A stretch of DNA of 64,000 bases, taken from positions 186,001-250,000 of the IMG/VR virus record IMGVR_UViG_3300027770_000025. One strand, written 5' to 3'. Under the pieces are notes generated by a model, which saw nothing but the letters and a program-made list of their open reading frames with translations, was not told the DNA's origin and did no database searches. Below are positions 7,966 through 61,960 of this stretch, one piece after another (positions within the stretch are counted from its first letter, which is position 1; each line of letters starts with the position of its first letter). Both the position numbers and the translations under genes were made by a program.

Positions 7966-9528
7966 TTATGGTTTAAGTGTGGTGAATTCGCCTTTAATGA
8001 AATTGATATGCTGAGCTTTACCGTCATGATGAATTATAACGTGTGATTGAAGCCATCCGCTAGGTCCGATATTATAATTAACCCTTAGCTTAGTTGATGT
8101 ACCTACTGCAAGTGCTCCGTCTTTTCTACCCGGTGAGTGATAGTGACCGACTACTATTTTAGTATTAAGTTTTCTGAATTGTACTAAGGATCCTCTGGTT
8201 CCGCTAGAACCAATATCTCCATGTTGGCCTAATTCCCAGCCATTGATTACCAAGCTATCGCTTCTGCCTAGAGTTTTGTACTTGGGGTATTTAGCGTTTA
8301 TTAAATAAGGTATAACACCGTTTGGAGCCACACCTTTAAGTAGCAATGCACTGTATTCCATATACTCTATGGAATTTTTCATGGTCGAAGCCTTTCTCCA
8401 ATCAGTTCCTTTTAGCCATCTATCCAAAAAATCATCATGATTACTTCTAACAATTACCACGTTATATTCTTCAAAGCTTTTTAATCCATCAAGCATGGCA
8501 TCAACTTCACTCTTAAGAGAATTAGTTCCGTCTAATTCTCTTTGATATTGTATGAAAGGATCTTTTGATTCGTGGTGGTTAATAGAAAGCCCATCAAATA
8601 CATCATGAAGAACTACGTGTTCCGGTTTTAGATTCTTGAATAGATCAAGTGTTTTTAAAATGACCCTTTCGTCATGCTGGCCGTAGTGAATATCTCCTAA
8701 TATAGCAGCTGCAATCGAATCAATCTTAGAAACTTCCCCTTCCTCAACTTTATAGTATAAATCGCAGAAATCCCCATCTTCGGTAGCTGTAACCTGTCTG
8801 GCAAAGAATGTATTTGCATCTTTAATTTCCACTACAACAAAACCTAATGTGTGATGAAATTCACCTTTCTTTCCTGATTTTGAATCGGTGTAGTTTTTAA
8901 GGGTACATGCTCCAGTGGTCATCATCATCTTAGGAAGATTTCCTTCGAGTACAGGAATTGTTTCCATATGAACTCTTGGTGATCCAAAGACGCAAGAATT
9001 AATTCCACTCATACCTTGTAGTCCTGTCATTGGATCTACTGCAGTAGGTTGAATCTTGACATCTGACATGATCCACATATGTTTATGAACCTCATGACGA
9101 TTGGCATCAAGATATATTGCTATTCTATTTGACCATTCGTCATAACTTCTGTCAGAGAAAACTGAAGTTGGATTTTTATATCTTCCTGCAATGACGTGAA
9201 TGTCTGCATCTATCTCTTTGGCGTAAGCCTCTATGTTCATTATAAAATCCTCATGAACTGGAGTATCGTTCTGTGCCCAAGTAATTATAAATTTCTTTTT
9301 CTTCTTGTCAAATTTTCTTTCCTTGGCCTTTATGTACTGTGGTGACTCTGTTAGTGCTTTTTCTGTTATGCCTAATTTAGAAATCCATTTTTGTATTGTC
9401 CTTTCGGATTTTCCTATAAGATCACTTAGGGTTTTCATTCTCTGATCCCATGTTAAATCTCTGTTCCAGTAAATATCCGACATTTTAGATATTTGCTCGT
9501 CGTTTAATTCTTCAAACTTCATTAGCAA
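7966..9528 (-). CDS. T5 A1-like protein (metallophosphoesterase-fold nuclease)
   Basis: FIITWAQN, TGACTLKNY..SKSGKKGEFHH, LGDIH, HDVFD, SNHDDFL, HGD.G..G.RGS, GHYHSP and GWLQSH match phage T5 A1 motifs as recalled. Confidence 0.75.
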   Translation of the reverse strand: MLMKFEELNDEQISKMSDIYWNRDLTWDQRMKTLSDLIGKSERTIQKWISKLGITEKALTESPQYIKAKERKFDKKKKKFIITWAQNDTPVHEDFIMNIEAYAKEIDADIHVIAGRYKNPTSVFSDRSYDEWSNRIAIYLDANRHEVHKHMWIMSDVKIQPTAVDPMTGLQGMSGINSCVFGSPRVHMETIPVLEGNLPKMMMTTGACTLKNYTDSKSGKKGEFHHTLGFVVVEIKDANTFFARQVTATEDGDFCDLYYKVEEGEVSKIDSIAAAILGDIHYGQHDERVILKTLDLFKNLKPEHVVLHDVFDGLSINHHESKDPFIQYQRELDGTNSLKSEVDAMLDGLKSFEEYNVVIVRSNHDDFLDRWLKGTDWRKASTMKNSIEYMEYSALLLKGVAPNGVIPYLINAKYPKYKTLGRSDSLVINGWELGQHGDIGSSGTRGSLVQFRKLNTKIVVGHYHSPGRKDGALAVGTSTKLRVNYNIGPSGWLQSHVIIHHDGKAQHINFIKGEFTTLKP

Positions 9529-9557
9529 GTGTTAAGTTTATTATTAGCAAGTGTTAA
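9521..9557. repeat. 15-nt direct repeat ATTAGCAAGTGTTAA x2 with 22-nt period
   Basis: Copies at 9521-9535 and 9543-9557, at the start of the A1-like gene. Confidence 0.85.
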
Positions 9558-9621
9558 AGTTACTGGTTATTATATACTTTTTCCAATTAAAGGTTTCAAT
9601 TATATAAAAACGGATAAGCAG

Positions 9622-9900
9622 TTAAAAATTATAAGCTTTATCAGAAAATCTTTCTCCTGTAGCTCCTACTATATCATCATATATTTTAGACTCTTCCGCT
9701 TCTCTTTCCAGCTCCTCGAAGAACTCTTTTATATAAGTGCATTTTTCAAATTCCTCGGTAGACTCATAGTATACAAGAAGAGATTTTTTGATGCTTTCCC
9801 TCTTGGGGTATATTTTTGCTGACAATATGCTACCAACTCCATATTTTTTCATGGTAGCTATTGCATTTTCGAATACACCTCTATCTATTTTTTTTTCCAA
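9622..9900 (-). CDS. Hypothetical protein
   Basis: 92 aa ORF. Confidence 0.6.
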   Translation of the reverse strand: MEKKIDRGVFENAIATMKKYGVGSILSAKIYPKRESIKKSLLVYYESTEEFEKCTYIKEFFEELEREAEESKIYDDIVGATGERFSDKAYNF

Positions 9901-9906
9901 TTCTTA

Positions 9907-10095
9907 TTATATTGTTGTTGGATTATCTATCTCTTTTATTATGCTTAAAAGATGATTGCATTTTTCATAGTCCTCAAAATACTCAAGTAATTTTATGCAA
10001 TCTAATATTTTATCTTTATCCCGGATTCTTTCTCTTACTATCGCAGAATAGATTATTAGATTCTTGTTGTATATTTCCTTCTCATTATCTTTCAT
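9907..10095 (-). CDS. Hypothetical protein sharing a 'YFE.YEKC' type motif with its neighbour
   Basis: LEYFEDYEKC here versus YYESTEEFEKC in 9622..9900. Confidence 0.55.
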   Translation of the reverse strand: MKDNEKEIYNKNLIIYSAIVRERIRDKDKILDCIKLLEYFEDYEKCNHLLSIIKEIDNPTTI

Positions 10096-10172
10096 GAGAT
10101 CATCATCCTGATATTATTTAATTTACAAAAATTGTAGTATTTGCGAATAGCTAGGTTCAGCCTTTTATAAAC

Positions 10173-10207
10173 AAAAAACCCTCATGCTATATATTAACAT
10201 GAGGGGT
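10173..10207 (-). terminator. Rho-independent terminator
   Basis: CCCTCATG/CATGAGGG stem followed by a U-tract on the minus strand. Confidence 0.7.
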
Positions 10208-10226
10208 ATTTTAACTAGTTATTGTC

Positions 10227-10637
10227 TTAAGGAGCTACTCCAAAAATAACTTTTAGTGCAATAGCTAATATAGCTCCAAAAATAATCCAAAGAGCTTTAT
10301 TAACACCGCTTTGCCATTTCTTAAGAGAATCAACATCGATATTAAATTTCATATAATCTTCATATCTGTTTTCTTCAGCTAATCTAAATTTGGTATTCTC
10401 ATTAACCTTAACAATAACGCCAGATTCTGGATCAAGAAGCTTTTTCTTCATATCCGAAATATCATCCTTCATAGACCTTTGGTCTTTCTTAAGATCCTCC
10501 ATTGTTGTTTGCAGGTGTTTTAATTCACCATTCGGCATATTAGCTTTAAGATGATTTAGTTCATCTAAAATCTGCTTCATTAAAAACGTGCTTGTTATAT
10601 CTTTTTCTTCCATTGTCTTTCGGTTAATTTTGCCCAA
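10227..10637 (-). CDS. Coiled-coil protein with C-terminal TM helix (XhlA/holin-like architecture)
   Basis: Heptad-rich body; ALWIIFGAILAIALKVIFG at C-terminus. Confidence 0.55.
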   Translation of the reverse strand: MGKINRKTMEEKDITSTFLMKQILDELNHLKANMPNGELKHLQTTMEDLKKDQRSMKDDISDMKKKLLDPESGVIVKVNENTKFRLAEENRYEDYMKFNIDVDSLKKWQSGVNKALWIIFGAILAIALKVIFGVAP

Positions 10638-10698
10638 TTCCCAAAAGATAACTGATTATATATCCTGGAAGGTCTAAGATCTAAATGGTTTTTAAAAA

Positions 10699-10923
10699 TT
10701 ATCTGAGGGTTTTTCCCTGAGGATATTCAACGGTTATTCCAATTGAGAACTCACTGAATACCTCGAAAGCATCTTCCGATGCTTTTACGTAAAATACACC
10801 ATAGAAAGGCTCATCTTTTTCGCACACTTTATCCGTTATTATTTCACAATTGAAGTAGTTTATAAGGGAGCAAGCCTCTATATGAGATTTGGGATCGTGG
10901 GTTTTTACGTAAAATTCAACCAT
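10699..10923 (-). CDS. Hypothetical protein
   Basis: ORF track; coupled to neighbours. Confidence 0.55.
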   Translation of the reverse strand: MVEFYVKTHDPKSHIEACSLINYFNCEIITDKVCEKDEPFYGVFYVKASEDAFEVFSEFSIGITVEYPQGKTLR

Positions 10924-11207
10924 TATCTTTTCCCAGTTACTATTTCTGATATGATATTACCGTTCATTCTATAGTAATTTTCTTCAGAGTCCTTAACTAA
11001 CATTAATACCTGATCTATAGTACCCATTAATTTCATGCTCTTTTCCTCGAACACAAATTCAGAACCTAGATGGCTAACCTCTAAAGAGGCTCTACGAATC
11101 CATTTGGTTTGGTTCCTTCCGTAAAGATCCGCATAGTGTTTAAGCATTTCCTTACTGGGGGCTTTAAATGGGATTAATTCGGACTTTTTATTTTTATTAT
11201 CTTCCAT
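10923..11207 (-). CDS. Hypothetical protein
   Basis: ORF track; overlapping stop/start. Confidence 0.6.
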   Translation of the reverse strand: MEDNKNKKSELIPFKAPSKEMLKHYADLYGRNQTKWIRRASLEVSHLGSEFVFEEKSMKLMGTIDQVLMLVKDSEENYYRMNGNIISEIVTGKR

Positions 11208-11385
11208 AATAGATTGGGTTCTTTGTGAGTTCTTTAATGTCTATGTGTTTATTGTCTTTTAGCGAGCCTGCTATTTTTCTCATTTTATCACCCAATTCCA
11301 TGTTGTTTGGTGTTTCCTGTGTGATCATGAGAATTAAATCTTTCAAATCCTCGTAGTTTTTTGGTGTTTGTAGTTCATCATTCAT
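11197..11385 (-). CDS. Hypothetical protein
   Basis: ORF track. Confidence 0.55.
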   Translation of the reverse strand: MNDELQTPKNYEDLKDLILMITQETPNNMELGDKMRKIAGSLKDNKHIDIKELTKNPIYYGR

Positions 11386-11403
11386 TGTGAATTTAGTTAT
11401 TTT

Positions 11404-12189
11404 TTACATATTAGACTGCCTCAATATGCCTTTCTCGCTATTAAAGCAATGTAACGAAGTTATGTGCATAACAAAGTAACCAGGGGTAACATCTGACCAT
11501 CTTTCAGGATCTCTTTGTTTTAAGTTGTCTAACAACCACATAAGTTTTCTGCATGCCATATAAACATCGTCTCTAAAGTGTCTTATATAATCACATGATC
11601 TTATGTAATAAGTCATATGAATCCAATTTCCTCTCCTGATAAACTGATATCCCAAGGTGCATGGTACGCGTTCCCCGTGAACTGTTCCTGTATCTTCTGG
11701 AAACCAAATAGGTAAAAATGCTTGTCTAGTAAAAGGCTCTCTCTCCATAAGATCTACCACATCGCCAAAATCGCCATATTCATATCTAATACCTTCCATT
11801 TTACTATTAGGAACCTCTGAAGCAAATTTAGGCCAAATTCTTTCTGGGTATGTATGTGAGAATTTATCATGTCCTCCGAATTGAGCGTTATTTTTCTGAG
11901 CAAAAGGCCATCTAACATGCGATGGGGGAGGATTTAATGGTTGACCCCCTACTCTCTCACCAAAATGCTCATCTGCCCAAGGCAAATTTGGTCTGATCTC
12001 CGTTACTAATTCATCTATGGTGTGTGGCATAAAAAACTGGAAAGAATGATTCATACTTTCCCACATATCGTCAGGAGATTCTATCCCCTGCCATCTTTCT
12101 GTTTTAACAACATAACCGTGATTAAATAGTTCCTCCTTGGTCCATTTAATTGCTTCGCTTGGTTTATAAAAAGTTTTTATGCCTGCCAT
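11404..12189 (-). CDS. Thymidylate-synthase-fold enzyme, dCMP hydroxymethylase (T4 gp42)-like
   Basis: TRQA, catalytic PC, YQF, RSCDYIRHFRDD (T4 gp42 has RSNDVVFGFRND), HITSLHCF. Confidence 0.75.
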   Translation of the reverse strand: MAGIKTFYKPSEAIKWTKEELFNHGYVVKTERWQGIESPDDMWESMNHSFQFFMPHTIDELVTEIRPNLPWADEHFGERVGGQPLNPPPSHVRWPFAQKNNAQFGGHDKFSHTYPERIWPKFASEVPNSKMEGIRYEYGDFGDVVDLMEREPFTRQAFLPIWFPEDTGTVHGERVPCTLGYQFIRRGNWIHMTYYIRSCDYIRHFRDDVYMACRKLMWLLDNLKQRDPERWSDVTPGYFVMHITSLHCFNSEKGILRQSNM

Positions 12190-12235
12190 ATCCTAGTTTA
12201 TAGAAGTTTTAGAATAAAGTGAGAAATAAATTTCA

Positions 12236-12895
12236 CTATACATGTAAAATTACTGGTGAATTTTTAACCTCGTAATACAAATCAAGAATACTTGCATTTA
12301 CGTAGATTACGCCATCCTTTTCAACTACACCATCAGCCTCGTGGATATGGCCAAAAACATGAACCTTTAAATCAGAAAGGCCCTCTATTTTATTGGCTAA
12401 TTCAGGGCATCCAACTCTAAGACCAGATTTAGTAGCATCAAGGGTTAGATAAGGAGGTCCATGGGTTATTAAAATATTAGTGTCTACAGGAATAAGATCC
12501 CAGTGTTCGTTTATTTTCTCTTCAACTCTATTGAATGCCCAATTATGAAACCATGGGGTGACTGGACTACCCCAGAATTTTAAACCTTCCAATTCAACCC
12601 CACTGTCATTTAAGTATATTATTCCTGGTCCTATTCTATCCAGTATATCTTTTGCTGCCTCTGGCGAGTCTTCGAATAAAAAATCATGATTACCTGCAAT
12701 CATGATTTTATGTTTAAATGGTAATCCTGAATACCACTCTGTAAATTCTTCAACCTCCCACTTTCTTCCTCTATATGAAATATCACCCGCATGTACTATA
12801 ATAGCATCAGGATGGTTCCCGTATATCTCTTTAAGTTGAGCATCTATTTCATAGTGCTTGGTGTGGGTATCTGATATTAAAACTAAAGTTGGCAT
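12236..12895 (-). CDS. Calcineurin-like metallophosphoesterase (MPPED-like)
   Basis: ISDTH, HAGD, IAGNHD, ITHGPP, HVFGHIHE. Confidence 0.9.
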   Translation of the reverse strand: MPTLVLISDTHTKHYEIDAQLKEIYGNHPDAIIVHAGDISYRGRKWEVEEFTEWYSGLPFKHKIMIAGNHDFLFEDSPEAAKDILDRIGPGIIYLNDSGVELEGLKFWGSPVTPWFHNWAFNRVEEKINEHWDLIPVDTNILITHGPPYLTLDATKSGLRVGCPELANKIEGLSDLKVHVFGHIHEADGVVEKDGVIYVNASILDLYYEVKNSPVILHV

Positions 12896-12925
12896 CGGCT
12901 ATTATTTTCTTTAATGTTAATTGTT

Positions 12926-13240
12926 TTAATGATCTGCTTTGCTAGTGTCATTAGGATCCTTAGTAGATCCAGCTTCTATCGGCTTAGCATTAGCAGAAAC
13001 ATGTTCTCTGTTACAGGCATGAATAACTTTAATCTTAATAGTATCGTGGATGTAAATAACTTCCTGCTTAGGACAAACGTGTGATTCTTTTACCAATTCT
13101 TTACTATGTGATCCCAAAGAAGACTTTCTGGTCATAGCAATTATAACCCCGAATAATAACATCATAAATATTAATATTATAACAGAAATTGGGATTATCC
13201 CTATCCAGAATACGCCTCTAAAGTTATTTTTGTTTTTCAT
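12926..13240 (-). CDS. Membrane-anchored hypothetical protein
   Basis: N-terminal TM helix. Confidence 0.6.
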   Translation of the reverse strand: MKNKNNFRGVFWIGIIPISVIILIFMMLLFGVIIAMTRKSSLGSHSKELVKESHVCPKQEVIYIHDTIKIKVIHACNREHVSANAKPIEAGSTKDPNDTSKADH

Positions 13241-13646
13241 TTAGTTTTTTTATTATTGATTTAAGACTATGCTGAACGTTATTTTTATATTCATCCTCCA
13301 TCTGATTCCTTCTTTTTTCTACCTCCTCTATAAAAGTTTCGGTTAGCATCCTTTCTGATTTTTGTGAAAGGGGAACGTTATATCCATATACATGATTTAC
13401 TATTGATATCTGATTGTGGCCTAGTACTAAAAGCATAGACTTATCTCTAGTTCTTATATAATATTTTCCTGATAAAGGGGAGGTAAGAAGCTCCGACTCA
13501 GGATCCTTTAAAAGTTTTCTGAATATAGATGCGGTTTCTCTTTCGCTCTCTTCTATTTTGGAGCAATTTAACGGATTCATTATTCGATAAAATTTAATTC
13601 CTATTTTCTGTGTAATTCTTTTTAGCGTGTGAATTCTGTTGTCCAT
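13224..13646 (-). CDS. Hypothetical protein
   Basis: 140 aa ORF with an upstream TAnnTTTG box. Confidence 0.7.
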   Translation of the reverse strand: MDNRIHTLKRITQKIGIKFYRIMNPLNCSKIEESERETASIFRKLLKDPESELLTSPLSGKYYIRTRDKSMLLVLGHNQISIVNHVYGYNVPLSQKSERMLTETFIEEVEKRRNQMEDEYKNNVQHSLKSIIKKLNEKQK

Positions 13647-13684
13647 TTTTTTAATTTGTTGATTAGTACTTTTTTTATTTTATG

Positions 13685-13712
13685 CAAATTTATATAGCGA
13701 TCCCGAATAAAA
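13685..13712 (-). promoter_or_regulatory. Bacteroidota-type sigma-A promoter box TAAATTTG with upstream TTTTTATTCGGG element
   Basis: Minus strand TTTTTATTCGGG-N9-TAAATTTG. Confidence 0.6.
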
Positions 13713-13724
13713 AAAATATTTTCA

Positions 13725-13764
13725 CAAAAAAACCTGCTAATTTATGATATTAGCAGGTTTTTTT
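13725..13764 (-). terminator. Rho-independent terminator (bidirectional-looking)
   Basis: AAAAAACCTGCTAAT/ATTAGCAGGTTTTTT stem flanked by A and T tracts. Confidence 0.8.
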
Positions 13765-13783
13765 AATATAGTTTCGTTATAAA

Positions 13784-14095
13784 TTAGCTTAGAAGCATAT
13801 CGTTTCCTTTATCCTTTGACTTTCTCTCTTTTTTAACTGCAGTTTCTTTTTTAACTATCTTCGCCTTAACCTTCTTTACCACTTTTTGTTTTGCTGGTTT
13901 TTCTTTAACTTTGGTTTTTTCTAATTCTGGTGTAGGTGAAGGCACATTCTCTAATATAACAGGGTATTCATTTTTTGTAACCTCGGGTACTGTTACTTCT
14001 GGTTCTGTTACTGTTGATTCTTTTTTTCTGTTAAATAATAAATATCCGATGTAGGAAACTGCCAATAAGATTAATAAGACGATTAAGGTTTGCAT
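13784..14095 (-). CDS. Membrane-anchored protein with acidic then Lys-rich low-complexity tail
   Basis: N-terminal TM helix; VTEPEVTVPEVT; KKVVKKVKAK. Confidence 0.6.
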   Translation of the reverse strand: MQTLIVLLILLAVSYIGYLLFNRKKESTVTEPEVTVPEVTKNEYPVILENVPSPTPELEKTKVKEKPAKQKVVKKVKAKIVKKETAVKKERKSKDKGNDMLLS

Positions 14096-14148
14096 AAATT
14101 TAGTTTTTTAATTTGGTTATTATATATTGATTACGCTGATTTGTTTCA

Positions 14149-14183
14149 AAAAAAATCCTTGTCAATTAGATTAACAAGGATTT
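14149..14183 (-). terminator. Terminator immediately after tmRNA
   Basis: AAATCCTTGT/ACAAGGATTT stem plus U-tract. Confidence 0.75.
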
Positions 14184-14187
14184 CGTG

Positions 14188-14650
14188 TGGATCTGCAGGG
14201 AGTCGAACCCTGGTCTCCTTCAGTTAATACTAAGAATTCATTCACAGGCTTAGAAAGTTTTTTATAAACTTACAAACTAATCGGGTTTATGACACCAGCA
14301 AACATTTTGCTGTCTTTTAGTGACTTACAGCGTCAGTCAGAGAACTTATACTAACAGCGATCTTAAGGGTATTGATGTTATCTCAGGGTTACTGATCATA
14401 AGCTCTACTTTTTTGGTACTGTTAACCCTTTTTCCCAACGTCACATTTTTTTAAACGGAGTAAGTGAGACTCCGGAGGTTATGCAGCGTAAGCGTACTCA
14501 ACCTCAGTTACAGGAGTACCAAACGAGTTGATAGCGTCCCAAACTGATTTTTTGCCATTTATAGCTTTATATAGGTTATTAAAGTGTTTCCAATACTAAC
14601 ACTGCCTGCATTCAAAGAACTACGCCTGCGGATCAATTCCGGTCAGACCC
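14188..14650 (-). ncRNA. ssrA: tmRNA (~463 nt) with tag (A)GKKSVWDAINSFGTPVTEVEYAYAA
   Basis: 5' GGGTCTG pairs with 3' CAGATCC-A including G3:U70; T-arm CAGGG-TTCGACT-CCCTG; resume context ATAAAT-GGC; tag frame 14556..14479 ends YAYAA-stop. Confidence 0.92.
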
Positions 14651-14730
14651 ATTTATTATGTATCTATAGATTAAGATGGATTATTTGTTTCGCCTCCATA
14701 TAATTCTCCGCTCTTAATTAAAATTATTTG

Positions 14731-14799
14731 TTATTTTTCTTCTCTTAGTAGCCAAAGTGCAATAATGCAAAGGCATGTTACCAATAAAACTTCTACCAT
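14731..14799 (-). CDS. 22-aa hydrophobic peptide MVEVLLVTCLCIIALWLLREEK
   Basis: Hand translation; begins 4 nt after the SLT stop. Confidence 0.45.
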   Translation of the reverse strand: MVEVLLVTCLCIIALWLLREEK

Positions 14800-14802
14800 A
14801 AT

Positions 14803-15324
14803 TTATCTGACTTTATAATTATAAACATCAATTGCATATTGATTTACCATCGGCCTACCTGTATTATAAGCACCGAATACTAATTTCCAATCTCCATAAG
14901 TTTCATATAGATGTTTCAGTAATTTCATACTCGTTTCAATATTAAACCTTATGTCTGTTCTAAGATTGTTTCTATCGATGACTTTATCTTTCCACATCAT
15001 TCTAGCAGTTGCCGGCATTATTTGCATTGGTCCTACTGCTCCGGCACAACTTTCTTGACCCGGATTATATTTCCAATGAAATGGACCTTCATATCTCGTT
15101 TCCTTAAATGCTACGCCAAAAGCGTAGTCTCTTGGTATCCCGTACTGTTCGGAATATTTTTCAATGTAATAATACATTTGAAGGCAAGGCGGGGATTGAG
15201 AATTTATAGGATTTCCCCTTACTGCTATTTCTGCTTCGTTCTCTATCTCTTTAGTTTCGAAATAAAAGAAAGCCAGAATAGCTAGCATCATTGCACCCAA
15301 GAGTGTGTATATGCCTCTGAACAT
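14803..15324 (-). CDS. Lytic transglycosylase (SLT domain) with N-terminal membrane anchor
   Basis: FKET catalytic Glu, GAVGPMQIMPATA, AYNTG. Confidence 0.9.
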   Translation of the reverse strand: MFRGIYTLLGAMMLAILAFFYFETKEIENEAEIAVRGNPINSQSPPCLQMYYYIEKYSEQYGIPRDYAFGVAFKETRYEGPFHWKYNPGQESCAGAVGPMQIMPATARMMWKDKVIDRNNLRTDIRFNIETSMKLLKHLYETYGDWKLVFGAYNTGRPMVNQYAIDVYNYKVR

Positions 15325-16576: not shown

Positions 16577-18034
16577 TTATTTATTTTCAAAGTAGATTCC
16601 TGCATGGGCTTCACCCTTTGCTTTACCCGGACTATATTTATCTTCAGGCTCTTCAGTAACCACGAATGCCTTATTAGGGTTTACTATTAATCCCATTCTT
16701 CTCATTAGTGTTCTATTTGCTAAGAATGGTGTGCTTTTATCTGTTCTGCCGACAGGGGAAACTTTAACATTAGGTATTAGGCTTCCGTTAAATTCAAGGT
16801 TAATTTCTATGATAGGTCTAGTGTGTGTATCGCTTCCTATTTCAGCATCAGAATATCCAACGATATCATTAACGAACTTTTTATCACCAACTGACCAAAT
16901 AAGCTTTTTACCATTCTCTTCAATCTCGTCTGCATGAAGAGAGCAGGATTTTGCACCATTTCCTGTGTCAAATTTAGCTACCATGTCACCAATTCCAGGT
17001 ACAGATACTTTCTCAAGATAACCAATTTCTAAATTAGCATAGCTCCAATTAGCCTTATCTAAGATGTAATCAAGTACATCATTAACAATGGGTTTACCTA
17101 TAGCCTTGGAAATACCCTCGGTTCCAGGGGATGAATTAACCTCTAAAATATATGGTTTCTTAGTTTTCTTATCTATCATGATATCTACTCCACACCAGTG
17201 GCATCCAACTGCGTTAGCTGCTTTGCAAGCTATTTCTACTAAATCCTCTGGAATTTCGTAATTTGATACAGATCCGCCTAAAGAATAATTAGTTCTAAAA
17301 TCTTTATCTACCGCCTCTCTTTTCATAGACCCTAATATAATACAGTTGTCTGAAGATGGTTTGATTGGATCAAAGTTCTTAATTATAACCTGAATTCTAA
17401 GGTCAAAGTTTGAATCGATTTTTTCCTGAACTAATATCTCGCTGTTCTCGTCAAGTTTTCTTATCGTTTGATATACAGACTTTAAAGATGCGTAAGAATC
17501 CACAATAGAAACCCCGATACCTTGGGTTCCTGATAAAAGCTTCATGATGATTGGGAATTTGCCACCTATCTTTTCTAGTGCAGAATCAAGAAATTCCTCA
17601 TTCGGTACTAAAGCATATTTAGGAACGGGTAATCCCGCTTCCTCCATATATTGTGAAGTTATGTACTTATTTTCACAAACCTCAATGGATTCCAGTGTAT
17701 TCACAGTGAAATATCGGTCAGCTTCTAATTGTGTCAAAATTTGCTTAGTGTAAGAGTTTTCTATCACTCCTCTTCTTGGTATAATCACCGTTGAATTGGG
17801 ATCAATTAAAATTCCCTCTTTTCCAGTTTTTAATAGATGCCCATTATAAACTTTTTCTATCATCACTTGATTTACGTCAACCACATAGCATTCAACGCCC
17901 CTTTTTTCGCATTGTTCTGCGAAAGACTTAGATGTCTTACTTCCCTGCGTATTTCCAGTCAGAACTATAACCTTAGTAGTTTCACCTTTTGCTTCATTCA
18001 AAAAAGACCAAAAATCCAATACTTTACCAGCCAT
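16577..18034 (-). CDS. rimK: RimK-family ATP-grasp ligase fused to RimK-associated aspartic-protease-like domain
   Basis: CENK...LPVPK, PIIMKLLSGTQGIGV, LVQE...DLR, FRTNYSLGG, GVDIM, EVNSSPG; C-term AKFDTGNG...FLANR. Confidence 0.85.
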   Translation of the reverse strand: MAGKVLDFWSFLNEAKGETTKVIVLTGNTQGSKTSKSFAEQCEKRGVECYVVDVNQVMIEKVYNGHLLKTGKEGILIDPNSTVIIPRRGVIENSYTKQILTQLEADRYFTVNTLESIEVCENKYITSQYMEEAGLPVPKYALVPNEEFLDSALEKIGGKFPIIMKLLSGTQGIGVSIVDSYASLKSVYQTIRKLDENSEILVQEKIDSNFDLRIQVIIKNFDPIKPSSDNCIILGSMKREAVDKDFRTNYSLGGSVSNYEIPEDLVEIACKAANAVGCHWCGVDIMIDKKTKKPYILEVNSSPGTEGISKAIGKPIVNDVLDYILDKANWSYANLEIGYLEKVSVPGIGDMVAKFDTGNGAKSCSLHADEIEENGKKLIWSVGDKKFVNDIVGYSDAEIGSDTHTRPIIEINLEFNGSLIPNVKVSPVGRTDKSTPFLANRTLMRRMGLIVNPNKAFVVTEEPEDKYSPGKAKGEAHAGIYFENK

Positions 18035-19655: not shown

Positions 19656-20588
19656 TTATCTTAAATTTGTTGGGTCATTTGATACCCTACCTATATTTTC
19701 AGGATTTCTTGGTGATTTTAGATAAACCCAATTGCTTCCATCGAATGTATTCCAGTAAATATAATCACTTGGCCCCTGATTGGTTTCGATGAAATCATAG
19801 CCAAAATTTCTTCTGCAGAAATTTAGAAAATTGAATCCCCCTGGATTTTTAACTATTTTACCATTCAAATCATTTATAAGCAATCCTGAGATAGATTGAT
19901 CGTGTCTGTGTCCAACTTTACCACAGTTTCCGACATCAACTCCGTAAAAATCCCTTACTGGTTCATCCAATGATGATAAACTAGCACACTCATCTATAAG
20001 ATTCCATTTTAACCACTCAGATACAAAATCTAGGGTTTTCTTTGATTTTTGAAAGACCATCATGCCTGAAGCATGCTGTATGGAATGGCGATACTTTTGC
20101 ATGTCCATTCTATTCATACAGGACTCTGTGGTAAAGTTCTCATGCGTATGTGGAGCAACTTCGTTATTAACTATCCAAACACTTTCAGTGCTAAGTATAC
20201 CACCGTTTGAGTTGCACAGTTCTTTTATAACGTCAAGGCTAAACACCGAAGAATCGAACGATAGATTAGTCCAATGCTCGGGGGAAACGTCATTATAGAT
20301 TAAAAAATCTCCATCCCCTATTGACTTTAAAGCTTCTAGGATAGTGAATGGCTTATAGCATCTACCGTTCATAGCAGGATCATAATTATCTAGCATCTTT
20401 TTATTCTCCTTATAGAAATCTGTCGATAGTATATCATTAAATTTCCAAAAGAAAAAATTAGAGAATTCCATATGGGAATTACCTCTAAGAGTTTCTAAAA
20501 TAAAATCCTGAGTTGATGAATATTTGCCATCCTTACGCCCATATCTGTCATCAGATACGGTTACAAATGAAATGTTGCTTGTGCTCAT
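19656..20588 (-). CDS. Putative GT-A glycosyltransferase
   Basis: YKP, LIYND, SGMMVFQK...FVSEW, HRHDQS motifs. Confidence 0.6.
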   Translation of the reverse strand: MSTSNISFVTVSDDRYGRKDGKYSSTQDFILETLRGNSHMEFSNFFFWKFNDILSTDFYKENKKMLDNYDPAMNGRCYKPFTILEALKSIGDGDFLIYNDVSPEHWTNLSFDSSVFSLDVIKELCNSNGGILSTESVWIVNNEVAPHTHENFTTESCMNRMDMQKYRHSIQHASGMMVFQKSKKTLDFVSEWLKWNLIDECASLSSLDEPVRDFYGVDVGNCGKVGHRHDQSISGLLINDLNGKIVKNPGGFNFLNFCRRNFGYDFIETNQGPSDYIYWNTFDGSNWVYLKSPRNPENIGRVSNDPTNLR

Positions 20589-31672: not shown

Positions 31673-34153
31673 TTATGATCCACAGGCGATACAATCGTCT
31701 GGGTTGTCCAAGCTACAAACTATTCCGGATGTAAGCTCTTCCTCTGCTGCTTTGCTTAATTCCTCGCTAGTCATGCTTCCTAAGTCTATTTTCTTGGATT
31801 CAGTTTCGACGTCCTCCATTCTTTTAAGAGATTCTTTAGCTTTGGCCATATCTATCCCTAATCCTGCAATTGCATCAACAGCAGATTTAGTTCTTAGGTA
31901 GTACATACCAGTTTTAAGCCCTAGCTCCCAAGAGTGAAAATGTGCTGCCGTTAATTTAGCAGAGTTAACACCCTCGATGAATAGATTTAGAGACTGTGAC
32001 TGACAGATAAATTTACCTCTATCAGCTGACATTTGGATTAGATCCTTTTGTTTGATCTCCCATACTGTCTTATAAACTTCTCTGATCTCCTGAGGTATTT
32101 GTGGGATATTCTGAACAGATCCTTTGTGTAAGATAATAAGATTTTTCATATCCTCACTCCAAAGATCTAATGAGATTAAATCCTTAACAAGGTGTTTATT
32201 AACTAAAACAAATTCTCCACTTAATGTTCTTCTCGTATAGATATTAGATGTGAAAGGTTCGAAAGCTTCGTTATTACCCATGATCTGAGCTGTTGAAGCA
32301 GTTGGCATAGGGGCTAACAATAAAGAATTTCTAGCTCCATTCTTCATAACATCCTTTCTTAATTTAGCCCAATCCCATCTTCCTGAAAGTTGCTCGTCTT
32401 TAAATCCCCAAAGATTGAATTGGAAATCACCTTTACTTAATGGTGATCCGTCAAAGGTTTCATATTTACCGTCTTTTTTAGCTAACTCCATTGAAGCTGT
32501 CATAGCTGCAAAGTATATAGTTTCGAAAACTTCCTCGTTGGTTTTCATAGCTTCCTCAGAAGTAAATGCTATTCTCATATTAGCAAAAAGATCTGCTAAG
32601 CCTTGGATACCGATACCAATTGGTCTATGTCTAAAGTTAGATTTTTTTGTCTCGGGTGTTGGATAATAATTAATATCAATAACCCTATTTAAGTTGACCG
32701 TTGTTTGATAGGCAACATCATATAATGCTTTATGATCAACCTCACATTTACCTCTGTTAATCTTAGCAGTTCTTGCGTCTGTTGATTTTAAGAACTTATT
32801 AACAGGTATAGAAGCTAAGTTACAAACTGCTTGCTCATCTTTATCAGTGTATTCTAATATCTCTGTACAGAGATTTGAACTTTTAATCGTTCCAAGGTTT
32901 TGTTGATTTGATTTTCTATTAGCAGCATCTTTATAAAGCATATAAGGTGTTCCCGTTTCAATCTGGGAATCAATCACTTTGGTCCAAAGTTCTCTCGCTT
33001 TAATAACCTTTCTTGCTTTACCTGCAGCTTCAGCTTCAATATAAGCTTTTTCGAATTCGTCACCGTAAAGTTCCCAGAGTCCGGGAACGTCGGAAGGAGA
33101 GAACAATGACCAATCCTCACTGGCCTTAACTCTCTTCATGAATAGATCAGAGATCCAAAGTGCTAGAAAAAGATCTCTCGCTCTTAGTTCTTCTTTACCT
33201 GTATTCTTTCTTAGGTCTAAGAAATCTTCAATATCTGCATGCCAAGGCTCGATATAAATAGCAAAGGATCCTTTTCTTTTTCCCCCACCCTGATCTACGT
33301 ATCTTGCAGTTTCATTGAATACTTTTAGCATCGGAACGATACCATTTGATGTACCATTTGTTCCTTTGATATAAGAACCAGTACTTCTAATATTATGTAT
33401 GGCCAAACCTATACCTCCAGCATTCTGTGATATGGTGGCTACATCGGTTAAAGTTTTATAAATACCCTGTATAGAGTCATCAGACATTGTTAAAAGAAAA
33501 CAAGAAGATAATTGGGGTTTTCTAGTACCTGCATTAAATAATGTAGGCGTAGCGTGTGTCATCATATGGGTAGATAAAAGTTCGTATGTTTTAAGAACGT
33601 TCTTTGTGTCTTCTCCCCAAATTCCAGCAGCAACTCTCATATACATGTGTTGAGGACTTTCAGCTGGCTGTCCTTTCATCTTTAAAAGATAACTTTTCTC
33701 TAATGTTTTAAATCCAAAATATTCAAAATTAAAATCCCTTTCATGTATAATACCACCATCAAACTTCTGTTTGTTTTTCATAACAGAGCTATATGTTTCT
33801 TCGTTGATTAAACCTGCAGGTTGATTAGTTTCTGGATCTATGTAAGAATATAGATCTTGAATTGTTTCCGAGAATTTTTTCTTAGTTGATTTGTGTAATT
33901 TAGATACCGCAATTCTAGATGCCAATACCGAATAGTCCGGATGTTTTGGTATTAAAGAAGCTGCTGTTTCTGCTGCAAGATTATCTAGTTCATCTGTTGT
34001 AATACCGTCATAAATTCCTGCAATTACTTTTTGTGCGATTTCAATCGGATCAATATAATCCCCATTTAGACCATAAGTCATTTTTCTTACTCTGTTTGAT
34101 ATCTTCTCGAATCTCACGGGCTCTTTCGAACCATCCCTTTTTATTACCTGCAT
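31673..34153 (-). CDS. nrdA: Class Ia ribonucleotide reductase alpha subunit with ATP cone
   Basis: VIKRDG ATP cone, ATPTLFNAG, SSCFL, SNLCTEI, C-terminal CxxC. Confidence 0.97.
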   Translation of the reverse strand: MQVIKRDGSKEPVRFEKISNRVRKMTYGLNGDYIDPIEIAQKVIAGIYDGITTDELDNLAAETAASLIPKHPDYSVLASRIAVSKLHKSTKKKFSETIQDLYSYIDPETNQPAGLINEETYSSVMKNKQKFDGGIIHERDFNFEYFGFKTLEKSYLLKMKGQPAESPQHMYMRVAAGIWGEDTKNVLKTYELLSTHMMTHATPTLFNAGTRKPQLSSCFLLTMSDDSIQGIYKTLTDVATISQNAGGIGLAIHNIRSTGSYIKGTNGTSNGIVPMLKVFNETARYVDQGGGKRKGSFAIYIEPWHADIEDFLDLRKNTGKEELRARDLFLALWISDLFMKRVKASEDWSLFSPSDVPGLWELYGDEFEKAYIEAEAAGKARKVIKARELWTKVIDSQIETGTPYMLYKDAANRKSNQQNLGTIKSSNLCTEILEYTDKDEQAVCNLASIPVNKFLKSTDARTAKINRGKCEVDHKALYDVAYQTTVNLNRVIDINYYPTPETKKSNFRHRPIGIGIQGLADLFANMRIAFTSEEAMKTNEEVFETIYFAAMTASMELAKKDGKYETFDGSPLSKGDFQFNLWGFKDEQLSGRWDWAKLRKDVMKNGARNSLLLAPMPTASTAQIMGNNEAFEPFTSNIYTRRTLSGEFVLVNKHLVKDLISLDLWSEDMKNLIILHKGSVQNIPQIPQEIREVYKTVWEIKQKDLIQMSADRGKFICQSQSLNLFIEGVNSAKLTAAHFHSWELGLKTGMYYLRTKSAVDAIAGLGIDMAKAKESLKRMEDVETESKKIDLGSMTSEELSKAAEEELTSGIVCSLDNPDDCIACGS

Positions 34154-34175
34154 TTTTTAGTTTAATTATTTTTAT

Positions 34176-35159
34176 TTAGAAGTCTGTGTCGAAGTCGAAC
34201 GAATCTTCTGATTTGTTCATTACCCCTGATTTTTGATACTCGCCAACTCTTTTTTCAAAGAAGTTAGTTTTCCCCTGTAGTGAAATGTTTGCCATGAAAT
34301 CGAAAGGATTTTCTACATTGTATACTCTAGAACATCCTAAATCCATAAGCAATCTATCAGCTACAAACTCAAGATATTGTTTCATCAAATCTGAATTCAT
34401 TCCTATTAATCTAACTGGAAGCGATTCGGTAATGAACTCTTTTTCAATCTCTAGAGCGCTCATAATAATTTCTTTGATTCTTTCCTCCGAAACTTTATTT
34501 GATAAATGATTATTATGCAACATAACAGCAAAATCTGTGTGCATTCCTTCGTCTCTCGAGATTAGCTCATTAGAGAAAGATAGACCTGGCATAAGCCCTC
34601 TTTTCTTTAACCAGAAAATAGAACAGAAAGATCCACTAAAGAAAATACCTTCCACTGCGGCAAACGCCACGACTCTTTCTTGAAAGTGCGGTGAGTCTAT
34701 CCATTTAAGTGCCCACTCAGCTTTTTTCTTAACAGCAGGAATAGTATCGATTGCATGGAGAAGAGTGCTTTTTTCTTCCGGATCTTGAATATATGTGTCA
34801 ATTAAAAGAGAATAAGTCTCTGAGTGTATATTCTCCATCATTATTTGGAAACTATAAAAGAACTTTGCCTCAGTGTATTGAACTTCAGACAAAAAGTTCT
34901 CAGCCAGATTTTCATTTACTATACCATCGGAAGCTGCAAAGAAAGCTAAAACGTTCTTGATGAAATATCTCTCGTCGTCGCTTAATCTGTTTCTCCAATC
35001 GTTTAAATCCTGAGCTAGGTCAATTTCCTCCGCTGTCCATATGCAAGCTTGTTGTTGTTTATACATCTGCCAGATGTCGTGGTGCTCTATTGGAAATAAA
35101 ACAAACCTATCTGGGTTTTCTTGCAGAATAGGCTCAGGTATAGAATAAAAATCTTTCAT
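34176..35159 (-). CDS. nrdB: Ribonucleotide reductase beta subunit
   Basis: [44 protein letters not shown]. Confidence 0.97.
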
Positions 35160-38589: not shown

Positions 38590-38690
38590 GACGTATAAAA
38601 CTATTTGAAGAATTTATTGAGTATGTTATGCCGGTAAAAAAGCGTAACATGAAAAACATAGTCATTATACCTAATTGGAAGGTCTATTAA
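38586..38690 (+). CDS. 34-aa ORF MRRIKLFEEFIEYVMPVKKRNMKNIVIIPNWKVY (TTG start)
   Basis: Hand translation; TTGA overlap with the M28 stop; carries the shared N-terminal motif. Confidence 0.5.
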   Translation: MRRIKLFEEFIEYVMPVKKRNMKNIVIIPNWKVY

Positions 38691-39072
38691 TGGCCTTTAA
38701 ATAAGCATCCAGCTTTTTATCAGCAACCTCTATATTTAAGTTTCCGTTAATAAAGATTTCCCAAGAATCCCTGCCATATTTACCTATACCTGGCAGCTCT
38801 ATAGCATCTCTAAATCCCTCAACCCATTTCTGACTTAACTTTATTATCCGGGATGCTTTTACATTCTGAAATCCGGTTGTTTTTATGACCGCTGCCAGCC
38901 TTTCTGGATCACACCCAATAGTAGATATGGGCGTCGGGATAAGTTCAAATACGGAGCTTAAAATCGGTCTTACTTGCTTATTATTTGTTTGATTTAATAG
39001 AATACAACAAACCATCATTTTCCATGGCTCTTTCAGATAATCCTCCTGTATTAGTATCTCTCTTTCCCCCAT
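38671..39072 (-). CDS. MBD4-like HhH DNA glycosylase
   Basis: PWKMMVCCILLNQT, G....KA..IIKLS, LPGIGKYGRDSWEIF, D..L..Y. Confidence 0.85.
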   Translation of the reverse strand: MGEREILIQEDYLKEPWKMMVCCILLNQTNNKQVRPILSSVFELIPTPISTIGCDPERLAAVIKTTGFQNVKASRIIKLSQKWVEGFRDAIELPGIGKYGRDSWEIFINGNLNIEVADKKLDAYLKAINRPSN

Positions 39073-60206: not shown

Positions 60207-60209
60207 ATT

Positions 60210-61925: not shown

Positions 61926-61960
61926 TTTTTCTACGGGATCTTAATAAGTTATTGTATATA

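What the first reader, a model, noticed from the sequence alone, without database searches (positions are those of the whole stretch)
11404..12189. Candidate cytosine-hypermodification pathway centred on a dCMP-type TS-fold enzyme
Seen: RSCD-YIRHFRD-D puts Asp at the position of E. coli ThyA Asn177 and T4 gp42 Asp179. Known: Asp at this site selects dCMP over dUMP. The window also encodes a gp56-like dCTPase/dUTPase (35177), Adk, a GT-A enzyme between Pol and clamp (19656), an MBD4-like glycosylase (38671) and an A1-like nuclease. Common 6-bp sites such as GGATCC, GAATTC and AAGCTT appear freely. Inference: the genome may carry 5-hydroxymethyl- or 5-methyl-cytosine, possibly with a sugar not yet described, in a Bacteroidota phage.
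Basis: partly seen in the sequence, partly recalled or inferred. Interest (0 to 1): 0.8.

Follow-up and report, generated by a model that had tools for sequence, protein, structure and literature searches.

The report
Divergent dCMP-type thymidylate-synthase-fold enzyme
A freshwater jumbo phage carries, beside an ordinary thymidylate synthase, a second and very divergent enzyme of the same fold whose active site looks built for cytosine rather than uracil, so the phage probably alters the cytosine in its DNA, but the product is unknown and a sugar is unsupported.

Summary
ORF 11404-12189 (-) encodes a 261-aa thymidylate-synthase (TS)-fold protein. Its Asp208 aligns with E. coli ThyA Asn177 and T4 gp42 Asp179 by every method tried, and that Asp is invariant in a large phage family.

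- For: the same 348-kb genome has a canonical ThyA about 4.4 kb outside the window, so this gene is not the dTMP synthase. The window also has a gp56-like dCTPase, an MBD4-like glycosylase and a T5 A1-like protein. Relatives in other phages co-occur with ThyA or ThyX, and most loci outside the jumbo lineage have a cytidylate-type deaminase just downstream.
- Against: the protein fails the published signature of gp42-type hydroxymethylases. It has Arg where Asp/Glu is needed, His where Ser/Thr is needed and Asn at the Glu60 position. It also fails the hydroxylase signature (D169N).
- Sugars: no glycosyltransferase here can be tied to DNA, and one is a protein heptosyltransferase type.

Best reading: an uncharacterised TS-fold clade that modifies C5 of dCMP, with the product unresolved (methyl, hydroxymethyl or new). 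No experimental characterisation of this clade turned up in the searched literature. Cultured Serratia, Streptomyces and Gordonia phages carry homologues, so LC-MS can settle it.

The parts
11404..12189 (-). Divergent TS-fold enzyme, 261 aa; predicted C5-modifying enzyme acting on dCMP
   Evidence: Pfam PF00303 scores 17.4 bits, below the 24.3 cut-off. phrog_160 E 8e-24. AF2 mean pLDDT 95.5. Foldseek finds the TS fold. The family holds 4120 clusters at E<=1e-5.
11659..11661 (-). Cys177, the putative catalytic nucleophile (= E. coli Cys146, T4 Cys148)
   Evidence: Invariant in A2. Aligned. Codon checked.
11566..11568 (-). Asp208 at the pyrimidine-specificity position (= E. coli Asn177, T4 Asp179)
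   Evidence: Invariant in A2. Aligned. Codon checked.
11668..11670 (-). Arg174, three residues before the Cys (= E. coli Leu143, T4 Asp145); invariant and unlike any characterised class
   Evidence: The role of T4 Asp145 is taken from PMC6400193.
11578..11580 (-). His204 (= E. coli Gly173), near-invariant; a second family-specific residue in the C5 pocket
   Evidence: The list of residues within 6 A of C5 is from PMC13326640.
35177..35656 (-). gp56-like dCTP/dUTP pyrophosphatase; the inferred supplier of dCMP that also keeps dCTP out of the pool
   Evidence: 46% identity to T4 gp56 over 99 aa, E 6e-29. phrog_173. Best cultured-phage hits are Straboviridae dCTPases, including Shewanella phage Thanatos-2.
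31032..31694 (-). Adenylate-kinase-family NMP kinase; only a candidate for phosphorylating the modified dCMP
   Evidence: PF00406 E 4e-40. NCBIfam adenylate kinase 169 bits, UMP-CMP kinase family 127 bits, both below their cut-offs. PDB hits are adenylate kinases, and uridylate kinase scores 95 bits. Specificity was not determined.
38671..39072 (-). MBD4-like HhH-GPD glycosylase; inferred repair of T:G or hmU:G mispairs left by deamination of C5-modified cytosine
   Evidence: E 8e-17 to human and mouse MBD4 glycosylase domains over residues 7-124. PF00730.
31673..35159 (-). Class I ribonucleotide reductase, large and small subunits; dNDP supply in the same nucleotide-metabolism block
   Evidence: PF02867 E 4e-210 and PF00268 E 3e-111.
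12236..12895 (-). MPPED2-like metallophosphodiesterase immediately upstream of the TS-like gene; role unknown
   Evidence: E 3e-39 to MPPED2. Found within the +/-10 kb flank of the TS-like gene in 22 related loci; directly adjacent in L003-L005.
7966..9528 (-). T5 A1-like protein with a metallophosphoesterase core; possible host-DNA degradation
   Evidence: phrog_1745 E 7e-148 and phrog_221.
19656..20588 (-). GT-A-like ORF between the clamp-like ORF and the PolB C-terminal fragment; substrate unknown and not shown to act on DNA
   Evidence: No Pfam or PHROG hit. ESM Atlas look-alikes are GT34, DUF1647 and GT2. Present only in L012, L013 and L085 among 84 loci. Absent in L003.

Best explanation
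The ORF encodes a member of a large, phage-borne, biochemically uncharacterised clade of the ThyA fold.

What it keeps: the Cys nucleophile and the Arg-Ser-x-Asp nucleotide-binding core.
What it changes: it has Asp where uracil-specific enzymes have Asn, and it has a remodelled pocket around C5.

Most likely mechanism (every step inferred, none shown):
1. The gp56-like pyrophosphatase turns dCTP/dCDP into dCMP.
2. Cys177 adds to C6 of dCMP while Asp208 holds N3/N4 of cytosine.
3. C5 attacks a one-carbon donor, probably methylene-tetrahydrofolate.
4. The intermediate is resolved to a C5-substituted dCMP.
5. Kinases raise it to the triphosphate, and the split family-B polymerase puts it into phage DNA in place of some or all dC.
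6. The genome's separate canonical ThyA makes dTMP.
7. The MBD4-like glycosylase repairs deamination products.

The substituent is unresolved. My rough split is methyl 35%, hydroxymethyl 20%, other chemistry 20%, and not a dCMP enzyme 25%.
For: - Fold and catalytic core.
- Asp at the Asn177 position, invariant across the family. Its role as the dCMP/dUMP switch is established knowledge (PMC8670742; PMC13326640).
- Thr/Ser at the His147 position, as in T4 gp42.
- The same genome encodes a full canonical ThyA with Glu58, Leu143, His147 and Asn177.
- At least three further contigs carry both genes. One carries ThyX plus the TS-like gene.
- gp56-like dCTPase. MBD4-like glycosylase.
- In 10 of 12 loci outside the jumbo lineage, the family member is followed by a dCMP/MafB19-type deaminase and usually lies near an NTP pyrophosphatase and a polymerase. 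This is the neighbourhood that MetaGPA work links to cytosine-modified contigs (10.1101/2024.12.05.627091).
- The best profile score is to the Pamexvirus ThyA (PaMx28). Its genus mate PaMx74 and phage Xp12 are reported to replace C with 5mC. Scores are 83 against 67 for E. coli ThyA and 56 for gp42.
- The gene is well conserved: the 120 best hits are 66-96% identical.
Against: - No biochemistry exists for any member that I could find.
- The family is only about 15% identical to every characterised enzyme, so transferring the Asn/Asp rule is an extrapolation.
- By alignment it lacks the Glu58/Glu60 said to be conserved in all TS, CH and dCH enzymes. The position is Asn68 here and N/D/Q across the family.
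- It ends 14 residues after His247, so it lacks most of the C-terminal segment that closes over folate in ThyA. The cofactor may differ.
- The neighbouring deaminase in relatives could instead be read as a dUMP supplier.
- The kinase is an ordinary adenylate-kinase relative.
- No deaminase or DHFR was seen in the window.
- The genome assembles readily from many Illumina metagenomes, which argues against bulky hypermodification.
Confidence: 0.6

Rival explanations
1. One reading: a gp42-like dCMP hydroxymethylase makes 5-hm-dCMP, and after replication one of the window's glycosyltransferases adds a sugar, possibly a new one.
For: - Asp208 and Thr178 match T4 Asp179 and Thr149.
- A gp56-like dCTPase is present.
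- Several glycosyltransferases are in the window. One has a Glycos_transf_1 (PF00534) domain; I take this to be the GT-B class, like the RB69/DLP3 DNA arabinosyltransferases, whose structural matches are such enzymes.
Against: - Three signature residues of hydroxymethylases are not met: Arg174 for Asp/Glu, His112 for Ser/Thr and Asn68 for Glu60. In T4 even D145N abolishes activity (PMC6400193).
- The GT9 domain is a TibC/Aah-type protein heptosyltransferase, above its NCBIfam cut-off.
- The GT1 enzyme is fused to an FkbM methyltransferase domain; from my own knowledge this fusion is typical of glycan synthesis.
- The GT-A-like ORF is absent from the relative loci L003 and L005.
- T4 beta-GT has no hit in the window or in related loci.
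- The genome sequences easily.
Confidence: 0.13
2. The enzyme acts on dUMP: either a second, divergent thymidylate synthase or a dUMP hydroxymethylase. In relatives it would be fed by the neighbouring dCMP deaminase.
For: - It is annotated as thymidylate synthase in more than 100 GenBank phage records and in phrog_160.
- In relatives a dCMP deaminase lies just downstream, and a thymidylate kinase is annotated upstream in Serbin and Zuko. This resembles classical dTMP or hmdUMP modules.
Against: - Asp is invariant at the Asn177 position. No characterised dUMP-specific TS-fold enzyme that I know of has Asp there.
- A canonical ThyA or ThyX co-occurs in the same genomes, which would make a second dTMP synthase redundant.
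Confidence: 0.15
3. A TS-fold enzyme with non-folate chemistry, or a role outside DNA composition. Examples are a flavin-dependent hydroxylase-like reaction, making a modified nucleotide for another purpose, or simply draining dCMP.
For: - The Glu58 equivalent is missing, the C-terminus is truncated, and the C5 pocket has invariant Arg174 and near-invariant His204 and His112.
- There is precedent: TS homologues were recently shown to be flavin-dependent dCMP 5-hydroxylases (PMC13326640; PDB 9iqu/9iqc).
Against: - The Asp169-to-Asn mark of the known hydroxylases is absent; Asp200 is kept.
- The genomic company (dCTPase, RNR, polymerase, deaminase) is that of DNA precursor pathways.
Confidence: 0.12

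Closest known systems
T4 gp42 deoxycytidylate hydroxymethylase (PDB 1b5e, 1b49)
   Same: - Same fold, Cys nucleophile and Arg-Ser-x-Asp motif.
- Asp at the specificity position and Thr after the Cys.
- Similar size.
- The genome also has a gp56-like dCTPase and a separate canonical TS.
   Different: - About 17% identity; hhalign score 56.
- Arg instead of Asp145, His instead of Ser94 and Asn instead of Glu60.
- No alpha- or beta-GT homologue.
5-methyl-dCMP synthases of Xp12/Pamexvirus phages (PaMx28 ThyA used as proxy)
   Same: - Asp at position 177.
- Best profile-profile score: 83, E 7e-12. Pairwise BLAST detects nearly every family member.
- In siphophage members the gene sits in the same slot: NTP pyrophosphatase, TS homologue, deaminase.
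   Different: - Only 22-30% identity over a core of 110-170 aa.
- PaMx28 keeps Glu58 and Gly173, has Asn at 143 and Pro at 147, and has a long C-terminus.
- A DHFR gene lies near it.
- This window has no deaminase or DHFR.
MilA, CMP 5-hydroxymethylase of mildiomycin synthesis (PDB 5b6d, 5jnh)
   Same: Best PDB match both by profile (E 2.7e-10) and by structure (TM 0.71). It has a cytosine-specific Asp.
   Different: - About 15% identity.
- MilA has Asp at the 143 position and Glu68.
- It prefers the ribonucleotide.
- It belongs to bacterial antibiotic synthesis.
Flavin-dependent dCMP 5-hydroxylases (RB69 gp48, DLP3 gp80, HY126 AfhB; PDB 9iqu, 9iqc)
   Same: TS fold, short chain and dCMP substrate. 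They are found in T4-like phages together with a dCTPase.
   Different: Their diagnostic Asp169-to-Asn change is absent here, where Asp200 is 91/95 conserved. Identity is 12-14%.
Canonical ThyA (E. coli, and this genome's own copy at L199:3004-4215)
   Same: Same fold, Cys146, Arg166-Ser167, Asp169, Tyr94, Trp80, His207.
   Different: - Asn177 becomes Asp, His147 Thr, Leu143 Arg, Gly173 His, Arg127 Gln, Tyr209 Phe and Glu58 Asn.
- The C-terminal tail is missing.
- BLAST finds no significant similarity to the genome's own ThyA.

Membership tests
ThyA / thymidylate-synthase fold superfamily | Three-dimensional fold | tested here: met
   AF2 mean pLDDT 95.5. All 50 listed Foldseek PDB hits are TS-fold enzymes, E about 1e-13 to 1e-10.
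ThyA / thymidylate-synthase fold superfamily | Catalytic Cys after Pro, and the Arg-Ser-x-Asp motif | tested here: met
   Cys177 and Arg197 are invariant; Ser198 and Asp200 are near-invariant.
ThyA / thymidylate-synthase fold superfamily | Reaches the curated Pfam PF00303 score | tested here: not met
   17.4 bits against a 24.3 cut-off. The NCBIfam best hit, TIGR03283, scores 22.5 against 174.6.
Canonical thymidylate synthase (dUMP to dTMP) | Asn at position 177, specifying uracil | tested here: not met
   Asp208, invariant.
Canonical thymidylate synthase (dUMP to dTMP) | Glu58, Leu143, His147 and the C-terminal folate-closing tail | tested here: not met
   Asn68, Arg174 and Thr178 at these positions. 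The chain ends 14 residues after His247.
Canonical thymidylate synthase (dUMP to dTMP) | Is the genome's provider of dTMP | tested here: not met
   A full canonical ThyA lies in the same contig, E 3e-70 to E. coli ThyA.
gp42-type dCMP hydroxymethylase | Asp at the specificity position (T4 Asp179) | tested here: met
   Asp208.
gp42-type dCMP hydroxymethylase | Asp/Glu three residues before the Cys (T4 Asp145), which activates the substrate water | tested here: not met
   Arg174, invariant. The signature is from PMC6400193.
gp42-type dCMP hydroxymethylase | Ser/Thr two residues before the catalytic Tyr (T4 Ser94), and Glu60 | tested here: not met
   His112 (88/95) and Asn68 (family N/D/Q). The N-terminal alignment is less certain than the core.
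gp42-type dCMP hydroxymethylase | Makes 5-hm-dCMP from dCMP and methylene-THF | not testable with these tools
   Needs an enzyme assay.
Xp12/Pamexvirus-type 5-methyl-dCMP synthase | Asp at position 177 | tested here: met
Xp12/Pamexvirus-type 5-methyl-dCMP synthase | Membership of that clade by sequence | tested here: inconclusive
   It gives the best profile score of the three classes compared, but only 20% identity over 111 columns. No tree was built.
Xp12/Pamexvirus-type 5-methyl-dCMP synthase | Linked 5mC-type deaminase and DHFR | tested here: not met
   Neither is in the 64-kb window. A deaminase is linked in 10 of 12 family loci outside the jumbo lineage.
Flavin-dependent 5-hydroxy-dCMP synthase | Asn replacing Asp169 | tested here: not met
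   Asp200 is kept in 91/95. The signature is from PMC13326640.
T4-type dC-replacement pathway | dCTPase plus a separate canonical TS | tested here: met
T4-type dC-replacement pathway | dNMP kinase that accepts the modified dCMP | tested here: inconclusive
   Only an adenylate-kinase-family protein was found.
T4-type dC-replacement pathway | DNA glycosyltransferase | tested here: inconclusive
   Glycosyltransferases are present, but none is linked to DNA.
T4-type dC-replacement pathway | Modified cytosine in virion DNA | not testable with these tools
   No nanopore run was listed. Only contigs of Illumina runs were available.

The most novel reading that the evidence does not exclude
The clade performs a C5 chemistry on dCMP that is not methylation, hydroxymethylation or hydroxylation. 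The grounds are its own invariant Arg and near-invariant His residues around C5 and the lack of the usual Glu. If so, thousands of phages carry a cytosine derivative not yet described. These include this freshwater jumbo lineage and more than 100 cultured Gordonia, Serratia, Streptomyces, Brevundimonas and Clostridium phages now annotated as having a thymidylate synthase.
Probability: 0.2. Interest if true: 0.85.

Novelty: new variant of a known kind. Interest (0 to 1): 0.62.

Why it matters
TS-fold enzymes are the entry point of most known pyrimidine modifications in phage DNA, and each new specificity has exposed a new base and new tools.

This clade is large: 4120 clusters at 90% identity. 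It falls below Pfam's threshold and is routinely annotated as thymidylate synthase, so any modification it makes would be overlooked. This genome, and at least four other contigs, carry a canonical ThyA or ThyX as well. That shows the usual annotation is probably wrong.

Homologues 40-47% identical sit in phages that are already in culture collections, so the question can be answered directly with existing material.

The result would bear on restriction and CRISPR evasion, on how well such phages are seen in metagenomes, and on the search for enzymes useful in epigenetic sequencing.

Tried and rejected
- Megablast of 20 kb of the window against cultured phages: no match.
- A weak BLAST hit of E. 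coli ThyA to ORF 20595-21356 suggested a second or split TS. The alignment lacks every TS motif, and the ORF has no Pfam or PHROG match, so I rejected it as spurious.
- I looked in the window for relatives of the unknown ORF that precedes the family in siphophages, and for relatives of their deaminases and thymidylate kinases. None were found.
- That upstream ORF has no Pfam family.
- Sequencing runs: all holders are freshwater Illumina data kept as contigs, and no nanopore run was listed. Modification could therefore not be read from signal or error patterns. Laying metatranscriptome contigs showed only thin, non-conclusive cover of the gene.
- Literature searches for work on cultured carriers (Serbin, Tlacuache, Strzyga) found genome announcements and an EcoRI typing step, but no base analysis.
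- Searches of MetaGPA supplements for family peptides found nothing.
- I built no phylogeny of the superfamily. At about 15% identity the deep branches would not be trustworthy, so I report profile scores instead.
- I could not inspect model coordinates, so the placement of Arg174, His204 and His112 around C5 rests on alignment to residues known from crystal structures.
Full report
**What is at the coordinates**

ORF 11404-12189 on the minus strand encodes 261 aa. General libraries barely recognise it. Pfam Thymidylat_synt scores 17.4 bits against a 24.3 cut-off. The best NCBIfam hit is an archaeal short thymidylate synthase (TS) at 22.5 bits. The phage library gives phrog_160, 'thymidylate synthase', at E 8e-24.

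An AlphaFold2 model built on 96 homologues is confident, with mean pLDDT 95.5 and pTM 0.93. Every strong Foldseek hit in the PDB is a TS-fold enzyme:
- MilA, a CMP hydroxymethylase: TM 0.71.
- Bacterial thymidylate synthases: about 0.65.
- T4 dCMP hydroxymethylase: 0.60-0.63.
- The HY126 dCMP hydroxylase: 0.62-0.64.

Identity to all of them is 10-17%.

**The observation**

Residues 197-208 read R-S-C-D-Y-I-R-H-F-R-D-D. Asp208 aligns with E. coli Asn177 and T4 gp42 Asp179 in two MAFFT alignments. The same pairing appears in hhalign against E. coli ThyA, gp42 and PaMx28 ThyA. An hmmsearch alignment to MilA agrees as well.

The Asp is invariant in 96/96 and 93/95 family members.

**The active site compared with known classes**

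Conserved as in all TS-fold enzymes (E. coli numbers in brackets):
- Cys177 (146)
- Arg197-Ser198 (166-167)
- Asp200 (169)
- Tyr114 (94)
- Trp94 (80)
- Arg155 (126)
- His247 (207)

Changed, and fixed within the family:

| Residue here | E. coli ThyA | T4 gp42 | Conservation in the family |
|---|---|---|---|
| Asp208 | Asn177 | Asp179 | invariant |
| Thr/Ser178 | His147 | Thr149 | T 53, S 40 of 95 |
| Arg174 | Leu143 | Asp145 | invariant |
| His204 | Gly173 | Gly175 | 86 of 95 |
| His112 | Val93 | Ser94 | 88 of 95 |
| Gln156 | Arg127 | Arg124 | 90 of 95 |
| Phe249 | Tyr209 | Tyr218 | 84 of 95 |
| Asn68 | Glu58 | Glu60 | N 56, D 25, Q 5 of 95 |

The chain also stops 14 residues after His247, so most of the C-terminal segment of ThyA is missing.

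Published signatures let me test membership:
- The T4 ternary-complex study defines hydroxymethylases by Asp/Glu three residues before the Cys, Ser/Thr two before the Tyr, and the universal Glu60. It shows that D145N is dead (PMC6400193). None of the three is met here.
- The 5-hydroxy-dCMP synthases are marked by Asp169-to-Asn (PMC13326640). That is also not met.

So this is a TS-fold enzyme with the cytosine-type Asp. It is not a member of the gp42 class or of the hydroxylase class.

**It is not the genome's thymidylate synthase**

The window is positions 186,001-250,000 of IMG/VR contig 3300027770_000025, which is 348,582 bp. The reverse complement of locus L085 is identical to window 1407-22189.

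I searched viral contigs with a canonical ThyA fragment found 5 kb from a family member in a related contig (L046). That search returned this same contig (L199). Its 403-aa ORF matches E. coli ThyA end to end at E 3e-70. It keeps Glu58, Leu143-x-Pro-Cys-His, Gln-Arg-Ser-x-Asp, Gly173, Asn177 and His207-x-Tyr209. It lies about 4.4 kb before the window start, on the same strand. BLAST finds no significant similarity between the two proteins.

At least three other contigs hold both genes. A siphophage-like contig holds ThyX plus a family member. Two paralogues with different specificity residues is the T4 arrangement (td and 42). It makes a second dTMP synthase unlikely.

**The family elsewhere**

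There are 4120 clusters at E<=1e-5 in the 90% database. The 50% library holds 287 representatives at E<=1e-10. Contigs run up to 434 kb.

About 120 cultured phage records hold a homologue, and the best 54 rows shown are 38-47% identical. They include Gordonia, Serratia, Streptomyces, Brevundimonas, Microbacterium, Mycobacteroides and Stutzerimonas phages. Nearly all are annotated as thymidylate synthase.

In Serbin and Zuko the order is thymidylate kinase, dUTPase_2/MazG pyrophosphatase, an unknown ORF, the TS-like gene, a cytidine/dCMP deaminase and DNA polymerase I. The deaminase follows the gene in 10 of 12 loci outside the jumbo lineage. The unknown upstream ORF has no Pfam family.

A MetaGPA study associates this neighbourhood (TS homologue with Asp177, deaminase, PRA-PH, PolA) with cytosine-modified contigs. 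There the TS homologues make 5-methyl-dCMP and the deaminase turns part of the modified pool into dTTP (10.1101/2024.12.05.627091). That study selected its IMG/VR homologues by a Pfam match stronger than this protein's (E 0.003 here), so much of this clade may have been missed.

The Pamexvirus ThyA (PaMx28) is the characterised-type homologue with the best profile score to the family. It scores 83, against 67 for E. coli ThyA and 56 for gp42. The margin is small.

**The surroundings in the window**

The phage has T4-like replication genes:
- gp32-like SSB, topoisomerase II subunits and a UvsW-like helicase;
- a family-B polymerase split into two distant ORFs.

The pathway-relevant genes are:
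- A gp56-like pyrophosphatase, 46% identical to T4 gp56. Its best cultured hits are Straboviridae dCTPases, including Shewanella phage Thanatos-2. The paper names a Shewanella phage Thanatos TS homologue among those tested and found to make 5-hydroxy-dCMP.
- Class I ribonucleotide reductase.
- An adenylate-kinase-family kinase of undetermined specificity.
- An MBD4-type glycosylase, E 8e-17, next to Fpg/Nei and near UvdE.
- A T5 A1-like protein and a non-specific endonuclease.

MBD4 removes T or hmU opposite G. That is the lesion left by deamination of 5-methyl- or 5-hydroxymethyl-cytosine (my own knowledge), so it fits C5-modified cytosine. This is circumstantial.

**Glycosyltransferases**

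- The 783-aa protein carries a TibC/Aah-type protein O-heptosyltransferase domain, 221 bits and above its cut-off. An adenylyl/cytidylyl-transferase-like ORF lies just outside the window.
- The next ORF is a GT1 enzyme fused to an FkbM methyltransferase.
- 29079-30344 is GT2 plus TPR repeats.
- 19656-20588 looks GT-A-like only by Atlas look-alikes and is missing from the relative loci L003 and L005.

None resembles T4 beta-GT. The sugar part of the hypothesis is therefore unsupported.

**Weak lines of evidence**

- Palindromes are not avoided. GATC is at 1.01 of expectation and GAATTC at 1.0. Only ATGCAT (4 observed against 16 expected) and CG-rich words are low. This is weak evidence either way.
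- The genome is held by at least 14 DNA runs from lakes. This argues against a bulky modification that blocks library preparation.

**Verdict**

The most likely reading (0.6) is an uncharacterised clade of the TS fold that modifies C5 of dCMP inside a T4-like dC-replacement scheme. The scheme would have a dCTPase upstream and a separate ThyA for dTMP.

The product cannot be named from sequence. Methyl is slightly favoured by the nearest characterised type, by the deaminase link in relatives and by the MBD4-like repair gene. Hydroxymethyl is disfavoured by the failed signature. The remodelled pocket and the missing Glu leave room for new chemistry.

All mechanistic steps are inferred; none is shown. 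I found no experimental work on any member in the searchable library. Subscription-journal work cannot be excluded.

Noticed in passing
window 14185-14650 (-): A phage-encoded tmRNA: ARAGORN gives tag peptide EVEYAYAA, and Rfam RF00023 scores 62.6 bits, E 1e-23. It is by far the deepest-covered stretch of 9500-15000 in four freshwater metatranscriptomes, with depth up to about 277.
   Followed up: partly
L199:3004-4215 (+), contig IMGVR_UViG_3300027770_000025 positions 180,422-181,633, about 4.4 kb before the window start: [quoted passage not shown]
   Followed up: yes
window 35757-37157 (-) and 18507-19655 (-): The family-B DNA polymerase is split into an N-terminal exonuclease/palm ORF and a C-terminal ORF about 16 kb apart. 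Nucleotide-metabolism, topoisomerase and chaperone genes lie between them.
   Followed up: no
window 972-3323 (-), 3327-5261 (-); L199:5907-6308: A TibC/Aah-type protein O-heptosyltransferase domain sits in a 783-aa protein, next to a GT1 + FkbM methyltransferase fusion. An adenylyl/cytidylyl-transferase-like ORF lies just outside the window. Together these suggest glycosylation of proteins, perhaps the collagen-repeat proteins at 58458-63514, rather than of DNA.
   Followed up: partly
window 12236-12895 (-): An MPPED2-like metallophosphodiesterase (E 3e-39) lies directly upstream of the TS-like gene. It is found within the +/-10 kb flank of the TS-like gene in 22 related jumbo-phage loci. Its role is unknown; a nucleotide or cyclic-nucleotide hydrolase is possible.
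   Followed up: partly
L001:6183-6992, L002:5877-6938, L088:9093-9971, L089:9135-10010, L090:9102-9956, L091:9114-9989, L010:5359-6165: In siphophage-type relatives an ORF of about 270-350 aa with no Pfam family always sits between the NTP pyrophosphatase and the TS-like gene. It may be a pathway partner. No relative is in the window.
   Followed up: partly
window 39978-41867, 23131-24174, 43204-43611, 16577-18034 (all -): The phage encodes DnaK and a full DnaJ, a SET-domain protein and a RimK-like ATP-grasp ligase.
   Followed up: no
window, whole: ATGCAT occurs 4 times against 16 expected from a Markov model. CGCG (4 against 15) and GCGC (13 against 22) are also low. Other palindromes are near expectation.
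   Followed up: no
window 19656-20588 (-): The GT-A-like ORF is an insertion relative to the 373-kb relatives, where the clamp-like ORF directly precedes the PolB C-terminal ORF. It is found only in the three closest loci.
   Followed up: partly
P0121 (636 aa); P0131 and about 20 other representatives of 360-420 aa: Some family members carry an insertion of about 130 aa near residue 100, which is the least confident loop of the model. Others are twice the normal length. The inserted parts were not examined.
   Followed up: no
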